In this document: positions 14,973-23,660 of the stretch, in pieces
How the letters are laid out: each line of letters opens with the position of its first letter
How positions within the stretch are numbered: the stretch's first letter is position 1
IMG/VR virus record: IMGVR_UViG_3300027749_002876
Coordinates: 434,001-498,000 of that record
Length of the DNA: 64,000 nt
Reading direction: 5' to 3' (one strand)
Translations under genes and position numbers: made by a program
Notes under the pieces: model-generated
Told to the model about the DNA's origin: nothing
Seen by the model: the letters and a program-made list of their open reading frames with translations, nothing else
Databases searched by the model: none

Positions 14973-15449
14973 TTACTTCTTTAGTATTGACCAAACCTTC
15001 TCTTTTTCAATGATTTCTTGTTCTAATTCTTTATAGCGTTTGCCCAATTCTTTTAACTCATCCCACTTATCTTCTAGTTTAGGATTTGGGTGAAGAATTG
15101 CTAATCGTTCTTCAATCTTATCTAACATGTCAGTAAGGCTTTTGCCCTTGATAGTTACATCACCTTCAAAATCAGCATCACCTTTAACACTAAGTGTGCT
15201 TCCCTGTAAATCAGGATCAGCTAATGATATATTAGACCAACTGCCACCTGTTGTATTTGTAGTATATACTTGCCCAGAACTGCCGCTATTTACTCCCCAA
15301 TATATACCACTTGAACCGGTTGAAGTGCCGGATATATTACTAACAGTATATGTAGGTGAACTACTCGAACCGGTTAAGGTAATCGTATCTATGGAGTCGC
15401 TAGACATTATTGCGCTAGCCATCATTGTATCATTACTAGGAATTGTCAT
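14973..15449 (-). CDS. hypothetical protein, Ser/Thr-rich N-terminus and coiled-coil C-terminus
   Basis: 158 aa; ATGA-coupled to the AbrB-like gene. Confidence 0.7.
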   Translation of the reverse strand: MTIPSNDTMMASAIMSSDSIDTITLTGSSSSPTYTVSNISGTSTGSSGIYWGVNSGSSGQVYTTNTTGGSWSNISLADPDLQGSTLSVKGDADFEGDVTIKGKSLTDMLDKIEERLAILHPNPKLEDKWDELKELGKRYKELEQEIIEKEKVWSILKK

Positions 15450-15634: not shown

Positions 15635-16195
15635 TTACTTATTCTGTAGATAGGGTCTGTAAATCTTTTCTAATTCATTAATGGTATGTTGCGTATTGCC
15701 ATCTTCATGTTTAACTGCAATACCACCTGCGTTACTCCAAAGATTCAAATACTTACCATAGTCATCTACCAATACATTTGGCTCACCATTACTCAATGCG
15801 TATTTGTGTTTATGTTGTGTAAAGATAGCATCACGTGTAGCACTAGGATTGTGTTCATCTAACCAGTCTTTTTTAGCCTCTACACTGGCTTTGGCATATG
15901 GTCCACGTAATGGTGCACTTAATACTGTATACGGAATGTTATTTTGATTTAACCATTGTACTACTTTGTTTCCACCTTCTAGAGGTTTAAGTTCTCTAAA
16001 AAACTTATATACTTCTTCAGGGCTACTCGTAGCTAACTCATTGATTGATGTTTCAGTATCAGGAATCTCTTTGTAATTACCAACATTATGTTTTGCCGCC
16101 CAAGCTCCAAAAAAGTCAGCCTGTACTCCATCCATATCTAAGTATAGATGTGGCATTTTTTTGTTTGTATCTTCCATCAATTCATTAAGTTTCAT
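15635..16195 (-). CDS. HAD-family 5'(3')-deoxyribonucleotidase
   Basis: LYLDMDGVQADF, VLSAP, LVDDYGKYL--W---GG-A. Confidence 0.85.
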   Translation of the reverse strand: MKLNELMEDTNKKMPHLYLDMDGVQADFFGAWAAKHNVGNYKEIPDTETSINELATSSPEEVYKFFRELKPLEGGNKVVQWLNQNNIPYTVLSAPLRGPYAKASVEAKKDWLDEHNPSATRDAIFTQHKHKYALSNGEPNVLVDDYGKYLNLWSNAGGIAVKHEDGNTQHTINELEKIYRPYLQNK

Positions 16196-16765: not shown

Positions 16766-17518
16766 TTATGGGTGCAAGGTGCTATAGGTAACTGCACCAG
16801 CGTTTGTAACTGTGAGAGCATTATTACTCGTATCAGTTATATAAGTACCAGCAGATGCAACTGCTAACAATAATTGAGTTGAAGTGCCTGTGATTGTCGC
16901 ACTAGGTGAACCGTTGATATTGGCGCTTTGTGTAGCAGTTAGAGGCGTAGTTGACGGTGTAAAGTTTGAAGTATAAACTGCCAGCCCCTTAACAATTCTC
17001 ATGCTGGTCATGTAACCATTGAATGGGTTATTGTTTTGATTGGCACTCCATCCAATTTCTAAACTTCTATTGGTGTTGGAATTATACACACTGGTAGAAG
17101 TCAATACCGAGATGCCACCCACATACACTGTGACTGTGCCACTGGCCCTAACCAAAGCAACATGTTGCCATATTCCTGCTGTGACAACTCCATCGGAACT
17201 ACCAGGGTATGCACTGCCACTATAATAATTGAGTTTGCCATTATTGTTGAGATCAAGATTGTCACTATTGGATCCAAACCACCATAATCTTTGACTTACA
17301 GTGACTGACGTAGGATTTATCCAAGTTTCTACGGTATAATCACCGGTGCCAAAAGCAAATGCAGACCCTGCTGTAACAGAAGAAATTACTAATTCATTAT
17401 TGGCACCTGCGTTAGTTCCATTAAAAAATAAACTGCCGGTAAATGAAGAAATACTATCAGTAGTTAATGAAATGCCTGGTCCAATGTTAATTCCTCCACC
17501 AATTTGTATTCCTGCCAT
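16766..17518 (-). CDS. stand-alone LamG-domain protein with Gly-patterned N-terminal leader
   Basis: FGTGDYTVETW, WQHVALVRASG, GLAVYTSNFTPSTTPLT; N-term GIQIGGGINIGPGISL. Confidence 0.85.
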   Translation of the reverse strand: MAGIQIGGGINIGPGISLTTDSISSFTGSLFFNGTNAGANNELVISSVTAGSAFAFGTGDYTVETWINPTSVTVSQRLWWFGSNSDNLDLNNNGKLNYYSGSAYPGSSDGVVTAGIWQHVALVRASGTVTVYVGGISVLTSTSVYNSNTNRSLEIGWSANQNNNPFNGYMTSMRIVKGLAVYTSNFTPSTTPLTATQSANINGSPSATITGTSTQLLLAVASAGTYITDTSNNALTVTNAGAVTYSTLHP

Positions 17519-17604
17519 TTTATTTCCTTTGTTATGACTTATGCTATTTGATTAAACTTAATCAATTAAATATATATTTATACACAATCAAAAGGAGCAT
17601 ACCA

Positions 17605-17766
17605 ATGAGTTGGTTCAAGCACAAACCCAGAACAAAAACACCCCCAAAATTACATGTATATCATACAAGTCCTATAGCAGAAAAACTATTAAAAGAGACA
17701 AAACTTGAAGTCACTGGTGTAAAAGCCAAGTTAGCAGAAGTAGAGAAAAAGAAAAATGAACGGTAG
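17605..17766 (+). CDS. small basic hypothetical protein, 53 aa
   Basis: AAAGGAG RBS before ATG 17605 (track start 17548 is likely too long). Confidence 0.55.
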   Translation: MSWFKHKPRTKTPPKLHVYHTSPIAEKLLKETKLEVTGVKAKLAEVEKKKNER

Positions 17767-17929
17767 AGAACTACAACAAATGTATCAACAATGGTGTCAA
17801 GGAAATGATGATTACAATTTTCGTTGGTTAGATTTTGTTGAGATGGCCGCAAGACAGTTTCAGCAACCTGAAAGTGAAGTCATTAGAGAGTTACAGAAAC
17901 ATTATTGGTTTGTAAAAAACAATAAGTAG
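17756..17929 (+). CDS. hypothetical protein, 57 aa, not in the ORF track
   Basis: MNGRELQQMYQQWCQGNDDYNFRWLDFVEMAARQF...; fills the gap. Confidence 0.55.
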   Translation: MNGRELQQMYQQWCQGNDDYNFRWLDFVEMAARQFQQPESEVIRELQKHYWFVKNNK

Positions 17930-17938
17930 ATTTATTGA

Positions 17939-17944
17939 TAAATA
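17939..17944 (+). promoter_or_regulatory. late-promoter-like TAAATA; further copies at 18904, 20136 and 20887 precede other genes of this cluster
   Basis: TAAATA in four successive intergenic gaps; resembles the T4 late promoter TATAAATA. Confidence 0.6.
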
Positions 17945-17968
17945 CTACTATATTATAGGATTAACATT

Positions 17969-18874
17969 ATGGAATTCAGTGGAATGACAATAAGTGGTGG
18001 GGTTTCTATTGTGCCTCCCCCTCCCTCAAATAAGGCTATATTTGGTTATGGTTATCCCACCTATTCAATAACTAACTTAGTATCAATCACAGGTGTAGTT
18101 GCTACTAATACAACTGGTGTTGGTACCGGTAGACATGGTTTAGCAGCCGCAACTTATGGTACTGATAAAGCTATATTTGGTTATGGTAATGACACTAATA
18201 TCAGGCTATCAATGACCAATCTTGTATCAAATACAGGTGTAGTTGCTACAGATACAACAGGTGTTGGTACTGCTAGAAATAATTTAGCAGCCACAGGTTA
18301 TGGCACTGATAAAGCTATTTTTGGTTATGGATATATTGGCTCAGCTACATCAATAACTAATCTAGTAAGTAATGCAGGTGTAGTAGCAACTGATACTGCA
18401 GGTGTTGGCACTGCTAGGTACGCAAGAGCAGCCACAACTTATGGCAGTTCTGGACAAGCTATATTTGGATATGGTAATGGTCCTGTATCAGTAACCAATC
18501 TAGTATCAAGTACAGGTATAGTAGCTACTGATACAACCGGTGTTGGTACCGCTAGATCCGACCTTGCTGCCGCAGGGTATGGTACCGATAAAGCTATTTT
18601 TGGATATGGCGCCACTAGCAGTAATACTGCAATAACTAATCTAGTAAGTAACACCGGCGTAGTCGCAACTGACACAACAGGTGTAGGCACTGCTAGGAGT
18701 AGTCTAGCAGCCGCGGGGTATAGTAGTGATAAAGCTATTTTTGGATATGGTGATAATTCAGGTGCTTTATCAATGACCAATCTAGTAAGTAATACCGGTG
18801 TTGTTGCTACTGATACTGCAGGTGTCGGTACTGCTAGATTGGCGTTAGCAGCCGCAAGTTACGGCCTCAGTTAA
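17969..18874 (+). CDS. six-blade Kelch-like beta-propeller repeat protein (paralog A)
   Basis: Six copies of (K/Q)AIFGYG-loop-xxTNLVSxxGxVATxTxGVGTxR-xx-xAAxxYG; ends with the closing strand LAAASYGLS. Confidence 0.75.
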   Translation: MEFSGMTISGGVSIVPPPPSNKAIFGYGYPTYSITNLVSITGVVATNTTGVGTGRHGLAAATYGTDKAIFGYGNDTNIRLSMTNLVSNTGVVATDTTGVGTARNNLAATGYGTDKAIFGYGYIGSATSITNLVSNAGVVATDTAGVGTARYARAATTYGSSGQAIFGYGNGPVSVTNLVSSTGIVATDTTGVGTARSDLAAAGYGTDKAIFGYGATSSNTAITNLVSNTGVVATDTTGVGTARSSLAAAGYSSDKAIFGYGDNSGALSMTNLVSNTGVVATDTAGVGTARLALAAASYGLS

Positions 18875-18931
18875 AAATACAATTAACTTATTAGAGTTAG
18901 AGATAAATACATTATCATAAAGGAGAATATA

Positions 18932-19147
18932 ATGATAGACTTAGAAAACATGCCTGCTCCAACACAAGAGCAAATCGCAGAAGCAAGAGAAAACGCATTC
19001 AATGCAGAGCATCCAGCATCATGGACATGGAATGAAGAAGCAACTTCATATGTTGCTCCAGTAAGTGTTCCAAATGATGGCTATCCTTATTTATGGGATG
19101 AAGCTACAACTAATTGGACACCATTTCCAGATTATCCTAGAGAGTAA
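18932..19147 (+). CDS. small Trp/Pro-rich protein (possible fibre-assembly accessory)
   Basis: HPASWTWNEE----VAP--VP-DG-PYLWDEATTNW; strong AAGGAG RBS. Confidence 0.7.
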   Translation: MIDLENMPAPTQEQIAEARENAFNAEHPASWTWNEEATSYVAPVSVPNDGYPYLWDEATTNWTPFPDYPRE

Positions 19148-19153
19148 TCTTTA

Positions 19154-20101
19154 ATGCAATTCAGTGGAATGACAATATCGGGTGGGATAACGGTAGTTTA
19201 TATCCCTCCTCCCTCAAACAAGGCTATATTTGGATACGGCGTCAATAATGCCGATAGTATGGTTTCAATTACAAACCTAGTATCAAACACTGGTGTTGTT
19301 GCGACTGATACTGCAGGTGTCGGTACTGGTAGGCGAAACCTAGGCGGTGCAGGTTATGGTACTGATAAAGCTATCTTTGGATATGGGCAAACTAGTAGTT
19401 TATTATTCTCACTGACCAATCTTGTAAGTAATACAGGAGTAGTTGCCACAGATACAGCAGGTGTTGGTACTGCTAGAAGTAATCTTGCGGCTGCTGGGTA
19501 TGGTGGTGATAAAGCTATATTTGGATATGGGGCAAATCTCAATCAAGATGTGATGTATTCATTAACTAATTTGGTATCAAACACTGGTGTAGTTGCTACA
19601 GATACTACAGGCGTTGGTACTAGTAGATTCCAACTGGCAGCCGCAGGTTATGGTACTGATAAAGCTATCTTTGGATATGGGTACAATAGTAGTTTTACTC
19701 CACTTTCAATTACTAACCTAATAAGTAATACCGGTGTAGTTGGTAATGATGTTACTGGTGTTGGAACTGCTAGAACTGCACTAGCGGCTACTGGATATGG
19801 CACTGATAAAGCTATTTTTGGATACGGATACGCAGGAGGCGTTCAATCAATAACTAACCTAGTATCAAATACAGGCGTAGTGGCCAGTAATACAACAGGT
19901 GTAGGTACTGCTAGATATAACCTTGCGGCCGCAGGTTATGGTGTTGATACTGCTATTTTTGGATATGGAGTTGGTCCTGCAAGTCCACCGTATCTATCAA
20001 TGACCAACCTAGTATCAAACACAGGGATAGTCGCAACAGATACCACAGGTGTAGGTACTGCTAGATACGGATTGGCAGCCGCTAGTTACGGGTTATCATA
20101 A
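19154..20101 (+). CDS. six-blade Kelch-like beta-propeller repeat protein (paralog B)
   Basis: Six copies of the same repeat; same N-terminal leader FSGMTISGG. Confidence 0.75.
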   Translation: MQFSGMTISGGITVVYIPPPSNKAIFGYGVNNADSMVSITNLVSNTGVVATDTAGVGTGRRNLGGAGYGTDKAIFGYGQTSSLLFSLTNLVSNTGVVATDTAGVGTARSNLAAAGYGGDKAIFGYGANLNQDVMYSLTNLVSNTGVVATDTTGVGTSRFQLAAAGYGTDKAIFGYGYNSSFTPLSITNLISNTGVVGNDVTGVGTARTALAATGYGTDKAIFGYGYAGGVQSITNLVSNTGVVASNTTGVGTARYNLAAAGYGVDTAIFGYGVGPASPPYLSMTNLVSNTGIVATDTTGVGTARYGLAAASYGLS

Positions 20102-20170
20102 ACCCTAAAAATTTTTACTCACACAAATTAGCTAATAAATATCTCTATACACAACCTATAGAGAGAAAAA

Positions 20171-20839
20171 ATGGCATCAAATCTAAATTCAGAATTTAAC
20201 TACCGTTACCAGGTGATCGGTTCAACACCCTGGGAAAAAATCAAAACACTTCAAGGCTTCTATGTAGGTCGCAAACGAGCGGCCGTACTAGAAGAAGTGG
20301 CTGAATTAAAATATCAAGCTAAACTTGAAGAACTAAAACATCTAAAAACAGTTCCAGCACTACCGCATATTATGCTTAATCTACAAGCAGAAATCATTGA
20401 GTTGGAATCACACTTGGATGACCAAAAACATGCTTTCGAACTTAATCGCAAAGAGATTAAAATATTAGAAAAATACATGGCTGAACTTTATGCTGAAGTT
20501 GAACCAACAAGACTTAAGCATCCAGATGGTACACCGTATACCGATGATGAGATGTTTGAAGCTAATGCTAACTATGAATTCACAGTCACAGTTGGTCGTG
20601 AGATTCAATCGGAAATCATTGCAATGGGTAGACCTAGTCCAGCTAAACTACTCAATGCTATGAGTAATCCACAAACATTAAATTCATTAATGCAAATTGG
20701 TCTTGTACCACAAGGTACTATATTACTAGAGCAGAAAGATATTATGTTAGAATTAACTAATCAATCAACTACAACAGTAATGGATGCACCAAAAGAATTA
20801 GAAAGTAACACTTCTAAGAAGAAAACAAAGAAAAAGTAA
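20171..20839 (+). CDS. coiled-coil hypothetical protein
   Basis: 222 aa, helical heptad pattern, basic C-terminal tail. Confidence 0.75.
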   Translation: MASNLNSEFNYRYQVIGSTPWEKIKTLQGFYVGRKRAAVLEEVAELKYQAKLEELKHLKTVPALPHIMLNLQAEIIELESHLDDQKHAFELNRKEIKILEKYMAELYAEVEPTRLKHPDGTPYTDDEMFEANANYEFTVTVGREIQSEIIAMGRPSPAKLLNAMSNPQTLNSLMQIGLVPQGTILLEQKDIMLELTNQSTTTVMDAPKELESNTSKKKTKKK

Positions 20840-20861
20840 TAGTATAATACTTACAGAAAAG

Positions 20862-20884
20862 AGGCTCACTATGAGCCTTTTTTT
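20862..20884 (+). terminator. intrinsic terminator
   Basis: AGGCTCA-CTA-TGAGCCT followed by a T run. Confidence 0.8.
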
Positions 20885-20911
20885 GATAAATAAGTTGAAG
20901 GAAGATATATT

Positions 20912-21283
20912 ATGTCAATAACGATAACAGGTGGTTTTACATTGGCTGGTGGTGGATGGACTGTTGCTCCCGCACCACCTACAGGTAATAAAGCTATCTT
21001 TGGATACGGTAGCAATGGATCTAATGTGTCAATGACTAACCTAGTAAGTAATGCAGGTATTGTTGCTGCTGACACTACTGGAGTAGGTACTGCTAGACGT
21101 TATCTAGCAGCCGCAGGTTATGGTACTGATAAAGCTATATTTGGTTATGGAACTATTGCTGGTAATCTTGGGGATACCTATTCACTAACTAACCTAGTAT
21201 CAAACACGGGTGTAGTAGCTACAAATACTGCTGGTGTAGGTACTGCCAGATACAGCCCTTCGGCTGCAGCCTACAGCTCATAA
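20912..21283 (+). CDS. two-blade Kelch-like repeat protein (paralog C)
   Basis: Two KAIFGYG repeats plus closing strand PSAAAYSS; own TAAATA upstream. Confidence 0.7.
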   Translation: MSITITGGFTLAGGGWTVAPAPPTGNKAIFGYGSNGSNVSMTNLVSNAGIVAADTTGVGTARRYLAAAGYGTDKAIFGYGTIAGNLGDTYSLTNLVSNTGVVATNTAGVGTARYSPSAAAYSS

Positions 21284-21357
21284 CCTAACAAACCAAAGGG
21301 TAAATCAAACTAGCATTTACCTACACATTCTGTTATAATCAAACGAATAGGATAAAA

Positions 21358-21672
21358 ATGAAATATCTACTACTCGCCGTATCCTTAGGAATAACAAACA
21401 TCTCCTATTCGCAAAAACTAGAACAAACAATAAAAGCTGAATTACCTTGTTATGATACAACAGAACTCTTTAAAAGTCTTAGAGAGAAATTCAAAGAACT
21501 ACCTTTACTAACAGGCAAAGCAGATGATGAAGCAAACTCAACAATGAGTCTTTGGTTGAATCCTGTTGATAACAATTGGACAATAATCGCAACTAAGAAA
21601 GAACTAAGTTGTGTTGTTGGAGCTGGAACTGATATGAAAATTATCTCAACCAGAAAAGGAACAAATGTATGA
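21358..21672 (+). CDS. secreted hypothetical protein
   Basis: Signal-peptide-like N-term; two Cys; extended -10 TGTTATAAT at 21331-21339; ATGA-coupled to the peptidase. Confidence 0.7.
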   Translation: MKYLLLAVSLGITNISYSQKLEQTIKAELPCYDTTELFKSLREKFKELPLLTGKADDEANSTMSLWLNPVDNNWTIIATKKELSCVVGAGTDMKIISTRKGTNV

Positions 21673-22406
21673 TTAAAAAACTGTTAGTAATATTAACACT
21701 GGTAACAAGTTCTGTATATGCTGACCAAACATTAACAGCACAAGCTTGGCTAGTAGCCGATCACAATGGAAAAATACTTGAAGGTTCCAACACAACAGAA
21801 ATTCGTAGTATAGCAAGTATCACTAAACTAATGACTTCAATGGTTGTACTAGATGCAGGACAATCACTCACAGAAATCATTCCAAAAAAATTATACAACA
21901 AGCAACTAACCAGAGAAACACTAATTGATTTGGCAATTGTAAAATCAGACAACAATGCTGCCAAACTATTATGTGATTACTATCCGGGAGGATATGACAG
22001 TTGTATCATAGCAATGAATAACAAAGCACATTCATTACAAATGAATCAATCAACATTTACTGATCCAACTGGCAGGATGCATACAAATGTAAGTACTGCG
22101 GAAGATTTGATTAAGTTAGTATTTGCGGCAAGTACATACCCACTCATAGTTCAAGCAAGTAATATGGATGCAGTACGTTGGAACGTCAATAAGAAGAAAA
22201 ATGTTGAGTTAAGAAACACTAACACTTTAGTAGGACATGGTTATAAATTCCTAGTCAGTAAGACAGGATTTATCAACAAAGCAGGTGGATGTATCGTTAT
22301 GATGATTGATACTGTATATGGTATCAGAACAGTTGTATTGTTAGGAAGTAAAAATACAAAGACCCGTATCCCTGAAGCACAGATGCTATCGCAGGTTATT
22401 CGATAA
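21669..22406 (+). CDS. D-alanyl-D-alanine carboxy/endopeptidase, S11 family (PBP7-like)
   Basis: Signal peptide; SITK (SxxK), SDN (SxN), KTG motifs. Confidence 0.9.
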   Translation: MIKKLLVILTLVTSSVYADQTLTAQAWLVADHNGKILEGSNTTEIRSIASITKLMTSMVVLDAGQSLTEIIPKKLYNKQLTRETLIDLAIVKSDNNAAKLLCDYYPGGYDSCIIAMNNKAHSLQMNQSTFTDPTGRMHTNVSTAEDLIKLVFAASTYPLIVQASNMDAVRWNVNKKKNVELRNTNTLVGHGYKFLVSKTGFINKAGGCIVMMIDTVYGIRTVVLLGSKNTKTRIPEAQMLSQVIR

Positions 22407-22665
22407 TCTTTTTGTATTGACTAGCATCACGCTTTGGGATGTAATCAACTCCGGGTACAGGACTGAAATCTCTCACAAGTTCTTGCTTCATCTCATCACC
22501 ATACTTCAATGTAATATAGCTGAATGACTGTTCATGCTTATCATTCATACCAATAATTAAATATTGATACCAACGGAATCTTTCATCAATTATTTTTTTG
22601 ACAATGGTATCATTGAGTATATCATCAAAGTTATTGTTTTCACGGTAAAAGGTATAGTATTTCAT
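22396..22665 (-). CDS. hypothetical protein
   Basis: ATGA-coupled start MKYYTF at 22665. Confidence 0.7.
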   Translation of the reverse strand: MKYYTFYRENNNFDDILNDTIVKKIIDERFRWYQYLIIGMNDKHEQSFSYITLKYGDEMKQELVRDFSPVPGVDYIPKRDASQYKKIIE

Positions 22666-22862
22666 TTTTTCCAAAGTATAAAGTTTATGTAATCGGATTC
22701 AGTTTCAAAATAGAAATCATATAATCCACCATCACGTCCAGCTGGTACTACACAATCATAGCCCCAATCATTAACACAGTTTCGCTGACACCAATCGATG
22801 ACGGGTTTTAGTTCCCCATAACCAATTGTGATTCTAGTCTTGTATTGAGTATTTGGTGACAT
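22662..22862 (-). CDS. small hypothetical protein (DWC...F-FETE-DY--F-L family)
   Basis: 66 aa; similar pattern in 63020-63271. Confidence 0.7.
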   Translation of the reverse strand: MSPNTQYKTRITIGYGELKPVIDWCQRNCVNDWGYDCVVPAGRDGGLYDFYFETESDYINFILWKK

Positions 22863-23334
22863 TCACACCGCCTTGTTCTAAAAATTCTAATCCTCTACTA
22901 TCTCTATATGCATCACGATAATAAATCTGTTTGATACCAGATTGATATATAGCTTTTGCACAATGGATACAAGGAGCATGTGTCACAAATAATGTAGCAC
23001 CATCACTAGATTCAGTACTTGCGGACACTTTTGAAATTACATTCATTTCTGCGTGGAGTACCTCATCCTTAGTAACTAGTCGATATCTACGATTACTTTC
23101 TACAGTAATATCATATTCTTCAAATGGATATAGTTGTCCGTCCCAATTATCACCGGGCATGTATTCTTTATATTCACATTCGTTAGTCCATCCAGTTGGC
23201 ATACCATTGTATCCTGTACCTAGAATTTTGTTACCTTTAACAATAACAGCACCGACATTTAATCTAATAGCACTACTTAACTTACTAGTTAGTTCAGCTA
23301 TATCCATGTAATAATTTATAAATTTTTGTTTCAT
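22834..23334 (-). CDS. dCMP deaminase
   Basis: [24 protein letters not shown] zinc motifs. Confidence 0.92.
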
Positions 23335-23660
23335 TCAATAATTTCAATGCGTTTGTTTGGTATACCATCATATTCACTTGCATCAGGTAATGGTGATTTC
23401 TTTTTAGTAATGACTGACCATTTATTACTAAGTCGTACATTAACATCGAACCAATATTGATTTTCAACTGGATCTTTAATATCTTCCTGTGCTACAATAG
23501 CATTGACCGGACATTCAGGGATGCATACTGCACAATCAATGCACTCATCAGGATTAATTACAAGGAAGTTAGGTCCTTCATAAAAACAATCTACTGGGCA
23601 AACATCAACACAGTCTGTGTGTTTACATTTGATACAATTCTCTGTAACTAAGTGTGTCAT
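23331..23660 (-). CDS. fdxA: 7Fe ferredoxin (FdxA-like)
   Basis: [47 protein letters not shown]. Confidence 0.93.

What the first reader, a model, noticed from the sequence alone, without database searches (positions are those of the whole stretch)
20912..21283. Intact two-blade gene that could trimerise into a six-blade propeller
Seen: paralog C has its own TAAATA motif, leader, exactly two blades and the terminal closing strand, while A and B have six. No frameshift or decay is visible. Known: the Ralstonia lectin RSL builds a six-bladed propeller from three two-blade chains, and propellers are thought to evolve by blade amplification. Inference: oligomeric and fused forms of the same propeller coexist 2 kb apart.
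Basis: inference. Interest (0 to 1): 0.6.

Follow-up and report, generated by a model that had tools for sequence, protein, structure and literature searches.

The report
Two-blade phage propeller gene, probably trimeric
A giant freshwater phage carries, beside sixteen six-blade propeller genes, an intact and conserved 123-residue gene with only two blades; modelling says three copies close into one six-blade ring, a rare natural example of a propeller built from pieces.

Summary
Window 20912-21283 (+) encodes 123 aa: a 26-aa leader, exactly two ~48-aa repeats and a closing strand. It has its own hairpin/T-run, GATAAATA motif and RBS, and no decayed repeats nearby.

The window lies in a 524,565-bp T4-type phage record with 16 six-repeat paralogs. 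With a deep alignment, a six-repeat paralog folds as a six-blade Kelch-type propeller: pLDDT 94, and Z 32.9 at rmsd 2.3 A over 267 residues against KLHL17, Keap1 and SAKe6. It shows weak sequence kinship to the seven-blade Photorhabdus PLL lectins (E 4e-6).

Three copies of the two-blade chain are predicted to form a ring. The ipSAE score is 0.90 against 0.01 for the best control, and each C-terminal strand pairs with the next chain's first strand.

Three further two-blade orthologues, two of them syntenic, show scaffold dN/dS of 0.06-0.15 at dS about 1. So this is neither a recent deletion nor decay. Assembly collapse is unlikely but not excluded by reads.

The variable loops lie on one face, and relatives carry tail-fibre domains. 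This suggests a late-expressed binding module. Trimerisation and ligand remain untested experimentally.

The parts
20862..20884 (+). Hairpin (AGGCTCA-cta-TGAGCCT) followed by a T-run. It probably terminates the upstream 222-aa gene and insulates C as its own transcription unit.
   Evidence: Read in the sequence. The hairpin is also listed by the terminator scan.
20885..20892 (+). GATAAATA, a promoter-like motif resembling the T4 late promoter TATAAATA, 20 nt before the ATG.
   Evidence: the same motif at -25 to -31 precedes 7 of 17 paralogs. The genome has a T4-type gp23 capsid gene. Promoter function is inferred.
20897..20904 (+). Ribosome-binding site GAAGGAAG.
   Evidence: Sequence. All paralogs carry AAAGGA-type sites at the same distance.
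20912..20989 (+). 26-aa Gly/Pro-rich leader (MSITITGGFTLAGGGWTVAPAPPTGN). It is not part of the confident trimer interface and may be a docking peptide.
   Evidence: Leader dN/dS is 0.16-0.39. The leader of A has pLDDT 57-78 in the model.
20990..21130 (+). Blade unit 1: strand B KAIFGYG, variable B-C loop, strand C TNLVSN, strand D IVAADT, GVGTAR, then strand A of the next blade.
   Evidence: HMM unit 1-49, score 81.1.
21131..21280 (+). Blade unit 2, ending in the closing strand (about 21251-21274, SPSAAAYS). This strand is predicted to pair with residues 27-33 of the next chain.
   Evidence: HMM unit 1-48, score 67.0. Inter-chain contacts 116-121 with 27-33.
21281..21283 (+). Stop codon TAA. 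No repeat remnant lies beyond it.
17969..18874 (+). Paralog A, 301 aa: leader plus six blades, modelled as a six-blade Kelch-type propeller.
19154..20101 (+). Paralog B, 315 aa: leader plus six blades, in an operon behind the 71-aa gene.

Best explanation
C is a real, expressed-looking and selected gene of a T4-type jumbo phage. Its 123-aa product is one third of a propeller.

Each chain supplies strands B-C-D of one blade, one complete blade, and strand A of a further blade. Three chains associate head to tail. The C-terminal strand A of each chain completes the first blade of the next chain, giving three 'velcro' closures instead of one. The result is a C3-symmetric six-blade Kelch-type ring like the single-chain paralogs.

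The hypervariable B-C loops, and the two variable residues after the invariant Arg, lie on one face. By analogy with Kelch domains this is the binding face. The trimer would therefore display two loop sets three times each.

The likely role is a late-expressed binding module (lectin or adhesin) that is virion- or tail-fibre-associated.

Shown: the gene anatomy, its conservation, the selection on it, and the fold of the six-blade form (as a model).

Inferred: the trimer (a model with controls), the binding face, late expression and virion association.
For: - Intact anatomy with no remnants.
- Sixteen six-repeat paralogs in the same 524-kb genome.
- Six repeats is the family norm: 57 of 63 distinct complete genes in IMG/VR loci, and 128 complete six-repeat proteins in the word search, most with N-terminal domains of 60-240 aa.
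- AF2 of A with 129 sequences gives pLDDT 94.4 and pTM 0.90. It matches six-blade Kelch domains at Z 32-33, rmsd 2.3-2.5 A over about 270 residues.
- The Atlas holds its own models of A (pTM 0.90) and C (pTM 0.75, pLDDT 0.84).
- The trimer scores ipSAE 0.90 in three runs against 0.01 for the best of 3 controls. Partner pLDDT is at least 82 and the runs share at least 76% of contacts. The tool's calibration: 20 of 30 true pairs and 1 of 23 single chains reach this mark, and it holds only roughly here. Contacts 116-121 with 27-33 and the inner-strand contacts fit a closed ring.
- Two-blade orthologues exist in L005 (same downstream genes), L006 (same upstream gene) and L001 (349-kb contig).
- Scaffold dN/dS is 0.06-0.15 at dS 0.8-1.2, against 0.5-1.7 in the loops.
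- 77 further apparently complete two-blade genes were found, some on up to 10 contigs from 10 samples and some inside tail modules.
- Loop hypervariability exceeds 3 bits, against under 0.7 bit in the scaffold.
- Relatives carry Mtd_N and Laminin_G_3 N-terminal domains.
- A Kelch-like protein is a virion component of jumbo phage CBB (PMC5259590).
- The profile matches PLL lectins at E 4.3e-6.
Against: - No experiment supports any of this.
- Only the three-copy state was modelled. Engineered two-blade WD40 fragments form tetramers with eight blades (PMC6805158), and the family also has 5- and 7-repeat members, so blade geometry is not rigid.
- The model may score high from general memory of propellers.
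- In the samples laid, the k=31 contigs do not bridge the blade 1/blade 2 junction.
- No ligand is known. The Trp-based sugar sites of PLL are not conserved, since the repeat has no Trp.
- The window's gene neighbourhood is not a structural module.
Confidence: 0.6

Rival explanations
1. C is functional, but it assembles differently. Possibilities are a tetramer (eight blades), a dimer (four blades), an open or fibrous oligomer, or a complex with another protein rather than a homotrimeric six-blade ring.
For: Engineered two-blade WD40 fragments form tetramers, and other fragment sizes give 8- or 9-blade rings (PMC6805158). The family tolerates 5 and 7 repeats. A relative genome has a 4-blade and a 2-blade gene in one cluster, which suggests mixed assemblies. 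Only three copies were modelled.
Against: Six is the overwhelming norm for closed single-chain members. The three-copy model is confident and ring-like, 0.90 against 0.01. This genome has no 4-blade partner.
Confidence: 0.2
2. C is an assembly artefact: a six-blade gene whose internal blades were skipped when the assembler joined conserved repeat segments in frame.
For: Repeats are in phase, so any collapse would look intact. Logan k=31 contigs from three other samples break at 21115-21136 and none bridges the junction. Short forms are common on short contigs but nearly absent from the IMG/VR loci, where 1 of 63 is short.
Against: - The break coincides with a 38-nt exact match to another paralog (21107-21144), which explains it.
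- The same assembly resolved 16 six-blade genes with intragenic exact repeats of up to 63 nt, whereas C's two blades share at most 12 nt.
- C-specific contigs have the same depth as the flanks, 4.5-5.8.
- The identical protein lies on 9 contigs.
- Three diverged orthologues from other assemblers have the same two-blade layout, and one of them is an unbranched k=31 contig spanning the gene and its flanks.
Confidence: 0.06
3. C is a non-functional remnant of a six-blade gene after an internal in-frame deletion, on its way to decay.
For: Six blades is the ancestral-looking norm. In-frame unequal recombination between repeats is easy. C's last strand (SPSAAAYSS) is slightly off consensus.
Against: - Scaffold dN/dS is 0.06-0.15 across four orthologues at dS about 1.
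- The promoter-like motif, RBS, leader and closing strand are all kept.
- No resident paralog is more than 78% identical in DNA.
- In L005 the gene is a diverged allele (53-83% nt) in 97% identical flanks and still has two blades.
Confidence: 0.05

Closest known systems
RSL (Ralstonia solanacearum lectin) and BambL, versus the fungal AAL/AFL lectins
   Same: A roughly 90-aa chain of two blades trimerises into a six-blade propeller, while relatives (AAL, AFL) carry all six blades in one chain (PMC3858362, PMC11883740). C is the same in chain size, blade count and predicted C3 ring.
   Different: No sequence homology: Pfam finds nothing and a PDB profile search with the two-blade alignment finds nothing. 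The blade type differs, being Kelch-like. Here the fused and split forms sit in one genome, 16 to 1, rather than in different kingdoms. The ligand is unknown. C has an extra 26-aa leader.
Kelch-repeat six-blade propellers (Keap1, KLHL12/17/20) and the designed SAKe6 proteins
   Same: Best structural match of the six-blade paralog: Z 32-33, rmsd 2.3-2.5 A over about 270 residues. Shared features are a hydrophobic strand followed by G-x-G, a conserved Arg before strand A, and variable B-C and D-A loops on one face.
   Different: Sequence identity is only 11-17%, and no Kelch Pfam hit appears at E <= 1. The repeat has no Trp. The scaffold is almost identical between blades. I know of no natural split Kelch propeller (my knowledge, not searched exhaustively).
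PLL-family lectins of Photorhabdus (PLL, PLL2, PLL3, PHL)
   Same: These are the only solved proteins found by sequence profile: PLL2 6rfz at E 4.3e-6 and PHL 5mxe at 1.3e-5. They share the G-T-D-x-A-hydrophobic repeat signature. Some relatives carry precomputed PF26607 Beta-prop_PLL hits, and Atlas clusters are named PLL-like.
   Different: PLL lectins have seven blades (PMC6943638) and use Trp-rich sugar sites. This family has six blades and no Trp. The local Pfam scan gave no hit.
Engineered oligomeric propellers (WD40/WRAP fragments, tachylectin-2 fragments)
   Same: Fragments of 2-5 blades fold as homo-oligomeric propellers (PMC6805158). Natural repetitive propellers with too few blades are known, and oligomeric forms are 'a minute fraction' of natural propellers (PMC9218822).
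   Different: Those are laboratory constructs or isolated oddities. Here a natural viral family shows 2-, 3-, 4-, 5-, 6- and 7-repeat genes, and the two-blade form is under purifying selection.
Kelch-like virion proteins of jumbo phages (e.g. CBB_552)
   Same: A Kelch-type propeller in a jumbo myovirus, found in the virion by mass spectrometry (PMC5259590). There is a weak structural match in BFVD.
   Different: These are single-chain, with different sequences, and no split form has been described.

Membership tests
Split (oligomeric) six-blade propeller of the RSL/BambL kind | Chain with exactly two four-stranded blades and no further domain | tested here: met
   Two HMM units after a 26-aa leader, and nothing else.
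Split (oligomeric) six-blade propeller of the RSL/BambL kind | Homotrimer closing a six-blade ring | tested here: inconclusive
   In silico only: ipSAE 0.90 against 0.01 for the best control, with ring-like contacts. Other stoichiometries were not modelled and no experiment was done.
Split (oligomeric) six-blade propeller of the RSL/BambL kind | Sequence homology to the AAL/RSL lectin family | tested here: not met
   No Pfam family at E <= 1. The PDB profile search with the two-blade alignment returns no lectin. This is an analogue, not a member.
Split (oligomeric) six-blade propeller of the RSL/BambL kind | Fucose binding at inter-blade sites | not testable with these tools
   Needs a glycan array, ITC or co-crystals.
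Kelch-type beta-propeller | Six four-stranded blades of about 44-56 aa in a closed ring | tested here: met
   For paralog A: model pLDDT 94.4, Z 32.9 and rmsd 2.3 A over 267 residues against Kelch domains. For C this holds only as the predicted trimer.
Kelch-type beta-propeller | Kelch sequence motif recognised by Pfam (PF01344 and relatives) | tested here: not met
   No hit at E <= 1 for A, B or C. One Atlas neighbour cluster has Kelch_1 in 18% of its members.
PLL-like beta-propeller lectins (PF26607) | Significant profile similarity to PLL/PHL | tested here: met
   The A1 profile against the PDB gives PLL2 at E 4.3e-6 and PHL at 1.3e-5, weaker for PLL and PLL3. The two-blade profile alone finds nothing.
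PLL-like beta-propeller lectins (PF26607) | Seven blades | tested here: not met
   Six repeats is the norm here, and seven is rare.
PLL-like beta-propeller lectins (PF26607) | Sugar binding | not testable with these tools
The Trp residues of the PLL repeat are absent from this repeat (alignment).
T4-type (gp23 capsid) phage | Major capsid protein of the Gp23 family | tested here: met
   PF07068 at E 4.4e-99, located at G000 355608-356621.

The most novel reading that the evidence does not exclude
This uncharacterised phage family may use blade number as an evolvable switch of quaternary structure. On this reading, 2-blade chains form trimers, 3-blade chains form dimers, perhaps 4+2 pairs form heteromers, and 6-blade chains stay monomers. 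All would build the same six-blade ring with hypervariable loops.

In-frame gain or loss of blades would then change the symmetry and valency of a receptor-binding face. A C3 ring, for example, would match trimeric tail fibres or trimeric host receptors. That would make the family a natural counterpart of designed self-assembling propellers and a living record of the oligomeric intermediates proposed for propeller evolution.
Probability: 0.25. Interest if true: 0.8.

Novelty: new variant of a known kind. Interest (0 to 1): 0.6.

Why it matters
Propellers are thought to arise by amplification of blades through oligomeric intermediates. Yet natural oligomeric propellers are described as 'a minute fraction' of natural propellers (PMC9218822), and most evidence comes from engineered fragments (PMC6805158).

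Here a natural two-blade chain sits in the same genome as 16 single-chain six-blade paralogs. It is under purifying selection and has diverged orthologues, and dozens of similar short forms occur in other phages. The question can therefore be tested directly with natural sequences: stoichiometry, stability, and what is gained by splitting.

The work also brings to light a large unannotated phage family. It has an ultra-conserved scaffold and hypervariable loops, and is often fused to tail-fibre domains. This makes it a plausible receptor-binding repertoire of freshwater phages and a ready-made symmetric binding scaffold.

Tried and rejected
- Pfam and PHROGs scans of A, B and C found nothing useful.
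- AF2 of A with only the 19 close paralogs failed at pLDDT 35. It succeeded with 129 diverse sequences.
- The PDB profile search with the two-blade alignment found nothing.
- Blade-by-blade identity was used to ask whether C equals blade 1 plus blade 6 of a six-blade gene. There was no positional signal, and the best match was 85% to blade 4 of another paralog.
- A recent donor among resident paralogs is rejected, since DNA identity is at most 78%.
- Short forms as exact subsets of neighbouring six-blade genes are rejected.
- Logan contigs of four other samples do not bridge the blade junction, so they neither confirm nor refute collapse. The break is explained by a 38-nt match to a paralog. 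All runs offered were contigs, not raw reads.
- GATAAATA is not enriched in the window as a whole; only its position is telling.
- A literature search for the Pfam name or a description of this family found nothing.
- The big representative search was not used, because the word search already gave thousands of relatives.
- Not tested for lack of jobs: 2- or 4-copy models of C, the 4+2 pair of L001, and the role of the leader.

Full report
**1. What is there**

The window is G000:C1:434001-498000 of a 524,565-bp IMG/VR virus record that CheckV rates 100% complete. The record encodes a T4-type major capsid protein (PF07068, E 4.4e-99).

The ORF at 20912-21283 (+) gives 123 aa. It consists of:
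- a 26-aa leader, MSITITGGFTLAGGGWTVAPAPPTGN;
- two repeats of the form KAIFGYG - variable loop - S.TNLVSNTGVVATDTTGVGTAR - xx - LAAAGYGTD;
- an end in ...ARYSPSAAAYSS.

A repeat HMM built from the paralogs finds two full units in C, at 20990-21130 and 21131-21280. It finds six in A (17969-18874) and six in B (19154-20101). A six-frame scan of 17000-23000, with stops read through, finds no other unit or remnant.

Upstream of C are a hairpin plus T-run, GATAAATA at 20885-20892, and GAAGGAAG at 20897-20904. The same tGATAAATA at -25 to -31, followed by an AAAGGA site, precedes 7 of the 17 paralogs. The others sit directly behind another gene, in most cases another paralog, in operons. The motif resembles the T4 late promoter TATAAATA (my knowledge), so late expression is an inference.

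**2. The family and its fold**

The genome has 16 six-repeat paralogs in six clusters, plus this single two-repeat gene. One cluster of four lies 1.2 kb after the capsid gene.

Pfam and PHROGs give nothing. Word searches find thousands of relatives in viral and freshwater metagenome data. Most longer relatives are an N-terminal domain of 60-240 aa followed by exactly six repeats. Those N-terminal domains include Mtd_N and Laminin_G_3. In 79 IMG/VR loci, 57 of 63 distinct complete genes have six repeats, five have five, and only C has two.

AF2 of A failed with 19 close paralogs, at pLDDT 35. With 129 diverse sequences it gave pLDDT 94.4 and pTM 0.90.

The model matches six-blade Kelch domains (KLHL17, KLHL20, Keap1, KLHL12) and the designed SAKe6 proteins. 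The scores are Z 32-33 and rmsd 2.3-2.5 A over about 270 residues, with Foldseek E down to 2e-13.

By sequence profile, the only solved relatives are the seven-blade Photorhabdus lectins: PLL2 at E 4.3e-6 and PHL at 1.3e-5 (PMC6943638). ESM Atlas neighbours are all Uroviricota, and some clusters are named PLL-like or Kelch.

**3. The two-blade chain as a trimer**

The repeat register starts with strand B of a blade and ends with strand A of a further blade. A single-chain six-blade protein therefore closes by one C-terminal 'velcro' strand. A two-blade chain can only complete its first blade with a strand from another chain.

The complex prediction with three copies gave ipSAE 0.90 in all three runs. 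The best of three controls, with unrelated partners, gave 0.01. Partner pLDDT was at least 82 and the runs shared at least 76% of contacts. The tool's calibration says 20 of 30 solved pairs and 1 of 23 single chains reach this mark, and that it holds only roughly here.

The confident contacts are residues 116-121 of one copy with 27-33 of the next, plus inner-strand contacts (67, 119). This is what a closed ring with three strand exchanges would give. The leader (residues 1-23) is not in the confident interface.

This supports trimerisation but does not show it. Engineered two-blade WD40 fragments do form tetramers (PMC6805158).

**4. Not a recent deletion, not decay**

No resident paralog is more than 78% identical to C in DNA. 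C's blades show no positional affinity to blades 1 or 6. Its leader is closest to the paralog at G000 512154-513107, not to A or B.

Two-blade orthologues with the same leader exist in three other assemblies:
- L005, with the same downstream 104-aa and Peptidase_S11 genes;
- L006, with the same upstream gene;
- L001, a 349-kb contig, where the gene ends a propeller cluster.

In L005 the flanks are about 97% identical to the window while the gene is only 53-83% identical. It is a diverged allele that kept two blades.

Among the four genes, the scaffold has dN/dS of 0.06-0.15 at dS 0.8-1.2. The leader has 0.16-0.39 and the loops 0.5-1.7, though loop counts are small and saturated.

**5. Assembly collapse**

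All runs on offer were Logan contigs, not raw reads. Contigs from three other samples match C perfectly but end and restart at 21115-21136, so none bridges the junction between the two blades.

That spot carries a 38-nt exact match (21107-21144) to another paralog, which is enough to break a k=31 graph. C-specific contigs have the same depth as the flanks.

The window's assembly resolved 16 six-blade genes with intragenic exact repeats of up to 63 nt, whereas C's own blades share at most 12 nt. The identical protein lies on 9 contigs. L005 is a single unbranched k=31 contig across the whole orthologue.

I put collapse at about 6%. It is not excluded.

**6. How common are short forms**

A word search with a 77-aa piece of C lists 77 apparently complete two-blade genes, with more than ten leader types. 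The first search lists 55 complete three-blade genes and about 13 four-blade genes.

Some of these are well supported:
- P0251 occurs on 10 contigs from 10 samples, placed between a Gly_rich_2 gene and an M15 peptidase.
- P0261 lies on a 50.8-kb contig inside a tail module with DUF4376 genes and the tail sheath.
- The 4-blade P0001 occurs on 6 contigs from at least 4 assemblies.

Most of the others lie on contigs under 3 kb, and the IMG/VR loci show almost none. Part of this abundance may therefore be collapsed assemblies. Atlas clusters of 107-133-aa proteins with the same structure, of 65 and 195 members, point the same way as the word search.

**7. Likely function**

Over the 96 blades of this genome, entropy is below 0.7 bit at most scaffold positions. 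It exceeds 3 bits at most positions of the B-C loop (5-12 residues after FGYG) and at the two residues after the invariant Arg. In Kelch domains the B-C and D-A loops form the substrate-binding face (my knowledge).

Four further observations bear on function:
- relatives are fused to tail-fibre-type N-termini;
- some two-blade genes sit in tail modules;
- a Kelch-like protein is a virion component of jumbo phage CBB (PMC5259590);
- the family has weak kinship to PLL lectins.

Taken together, the best reading is a repertoire of binding modules for host-surface structures. A C3 ring would suit the threefold symmetry of tail fibres or trimeric receptors. This is speculation.

The immediate neighbourhood of C is a mix of metabolic and small genes, not a structural module.

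**8. Comparison and novelty**

RSL and BambL (two blades, trimer) against AAL and AFL (six blades in one chain) are the textbook precedent (PMC3858362). C works like RSL but is not a member of that family. There is no homology, and the blade type differs.

Natural oligomeric propellers are rare (PMC9218822). I found no description of this phage family. I rate the finding as a new variant of a known kind.

Noticed in passing
G000 218159-220108, 269735-272637, 276400-278317, 287533-288471, 357869-361735, 512154-513107, 518181-519131; window 17969-20101: Sixteen six-blade paralogs sit in clusters. Their scaffold is almost invariant, while the B-C loops and the two residues after the invariant Arg are hypervariable (over 3 bits). 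This looks like a repertoire of binding proteins. One cluster of four starts 1.2 kb after the T4-type capsid gene.
   Followed up: partly
L001:6001-6651 and L001:8830-9207: A related 349-kb phage contig carries a four-blade gene (216 aa, seen on 6 contigs) and a two-blade gene (125 aa, 7 contigs) in the same propeller cluster. A 4+2 heteromeric six-blade ring is conceivable but was not tested.
   Followed up: no
window 18932-19147; G000 272678-272776; L001:6696-6911: A small protein (71 aa in the window copy) with the motif SWTWNE...WDEATTNW lies immediately upstream of a six-blade propeller gene in three places. It has a weak hit to phrog_7759. It may be a partner or chaperone of the propellers.
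   Followed up: partly
proteins P0007-P0120, P0249-P0351: The family shows 2, 3, 4, 5, 6 and 7 repeats behind the same leader types. Three-blade genes are common (55 apparently complete), which would fit dimers. Short forms are nearly absent from long IMG/VR contigs, so some may be collapsed assemblies.
   Followed up: partly
window 21358-22406: Directly downstream of C are a 104-aa protein with a signal-peptide-like N-terminus and a 245-aa Peptidase_S11 (D-Ala-D-Ala carboxypeptidase, E 8e-35), also with a signal-peptide-like start. This is an unusual cell-wall enzyme for a phage. Both are about 97% conserved in L005.
   Followed up: partly
window 16766-17518 (-) and 14973-15449 (-): A 250-aa Laminin_G_3 (concanavalin-like) protein matches PHROGs named baseplate wedge or virion structural protein. 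Near it lies a 158-aa Ser/Thr/Gly-rich protein with a charged C-terminal tail. These are further candidate binding modules next to the propeller genes.
   Followed up: partly
L005 versus window 20803-22130: Identity jumps from 53-83% inside the two-blade gene to about 97% from 21334 onward. The gene behaves as an exchangeable or fast-evolving cassette in a conserved backbone.
   Followed up: partly
window 22834-23660 (-), 15635-16195 (-): Auxiliary genes nearby are a dCMP deaminase, a 4Fe-4S ferredoxin with DUF3470, and an NT5C-type 5' nucleotidase.
   Followed up: no
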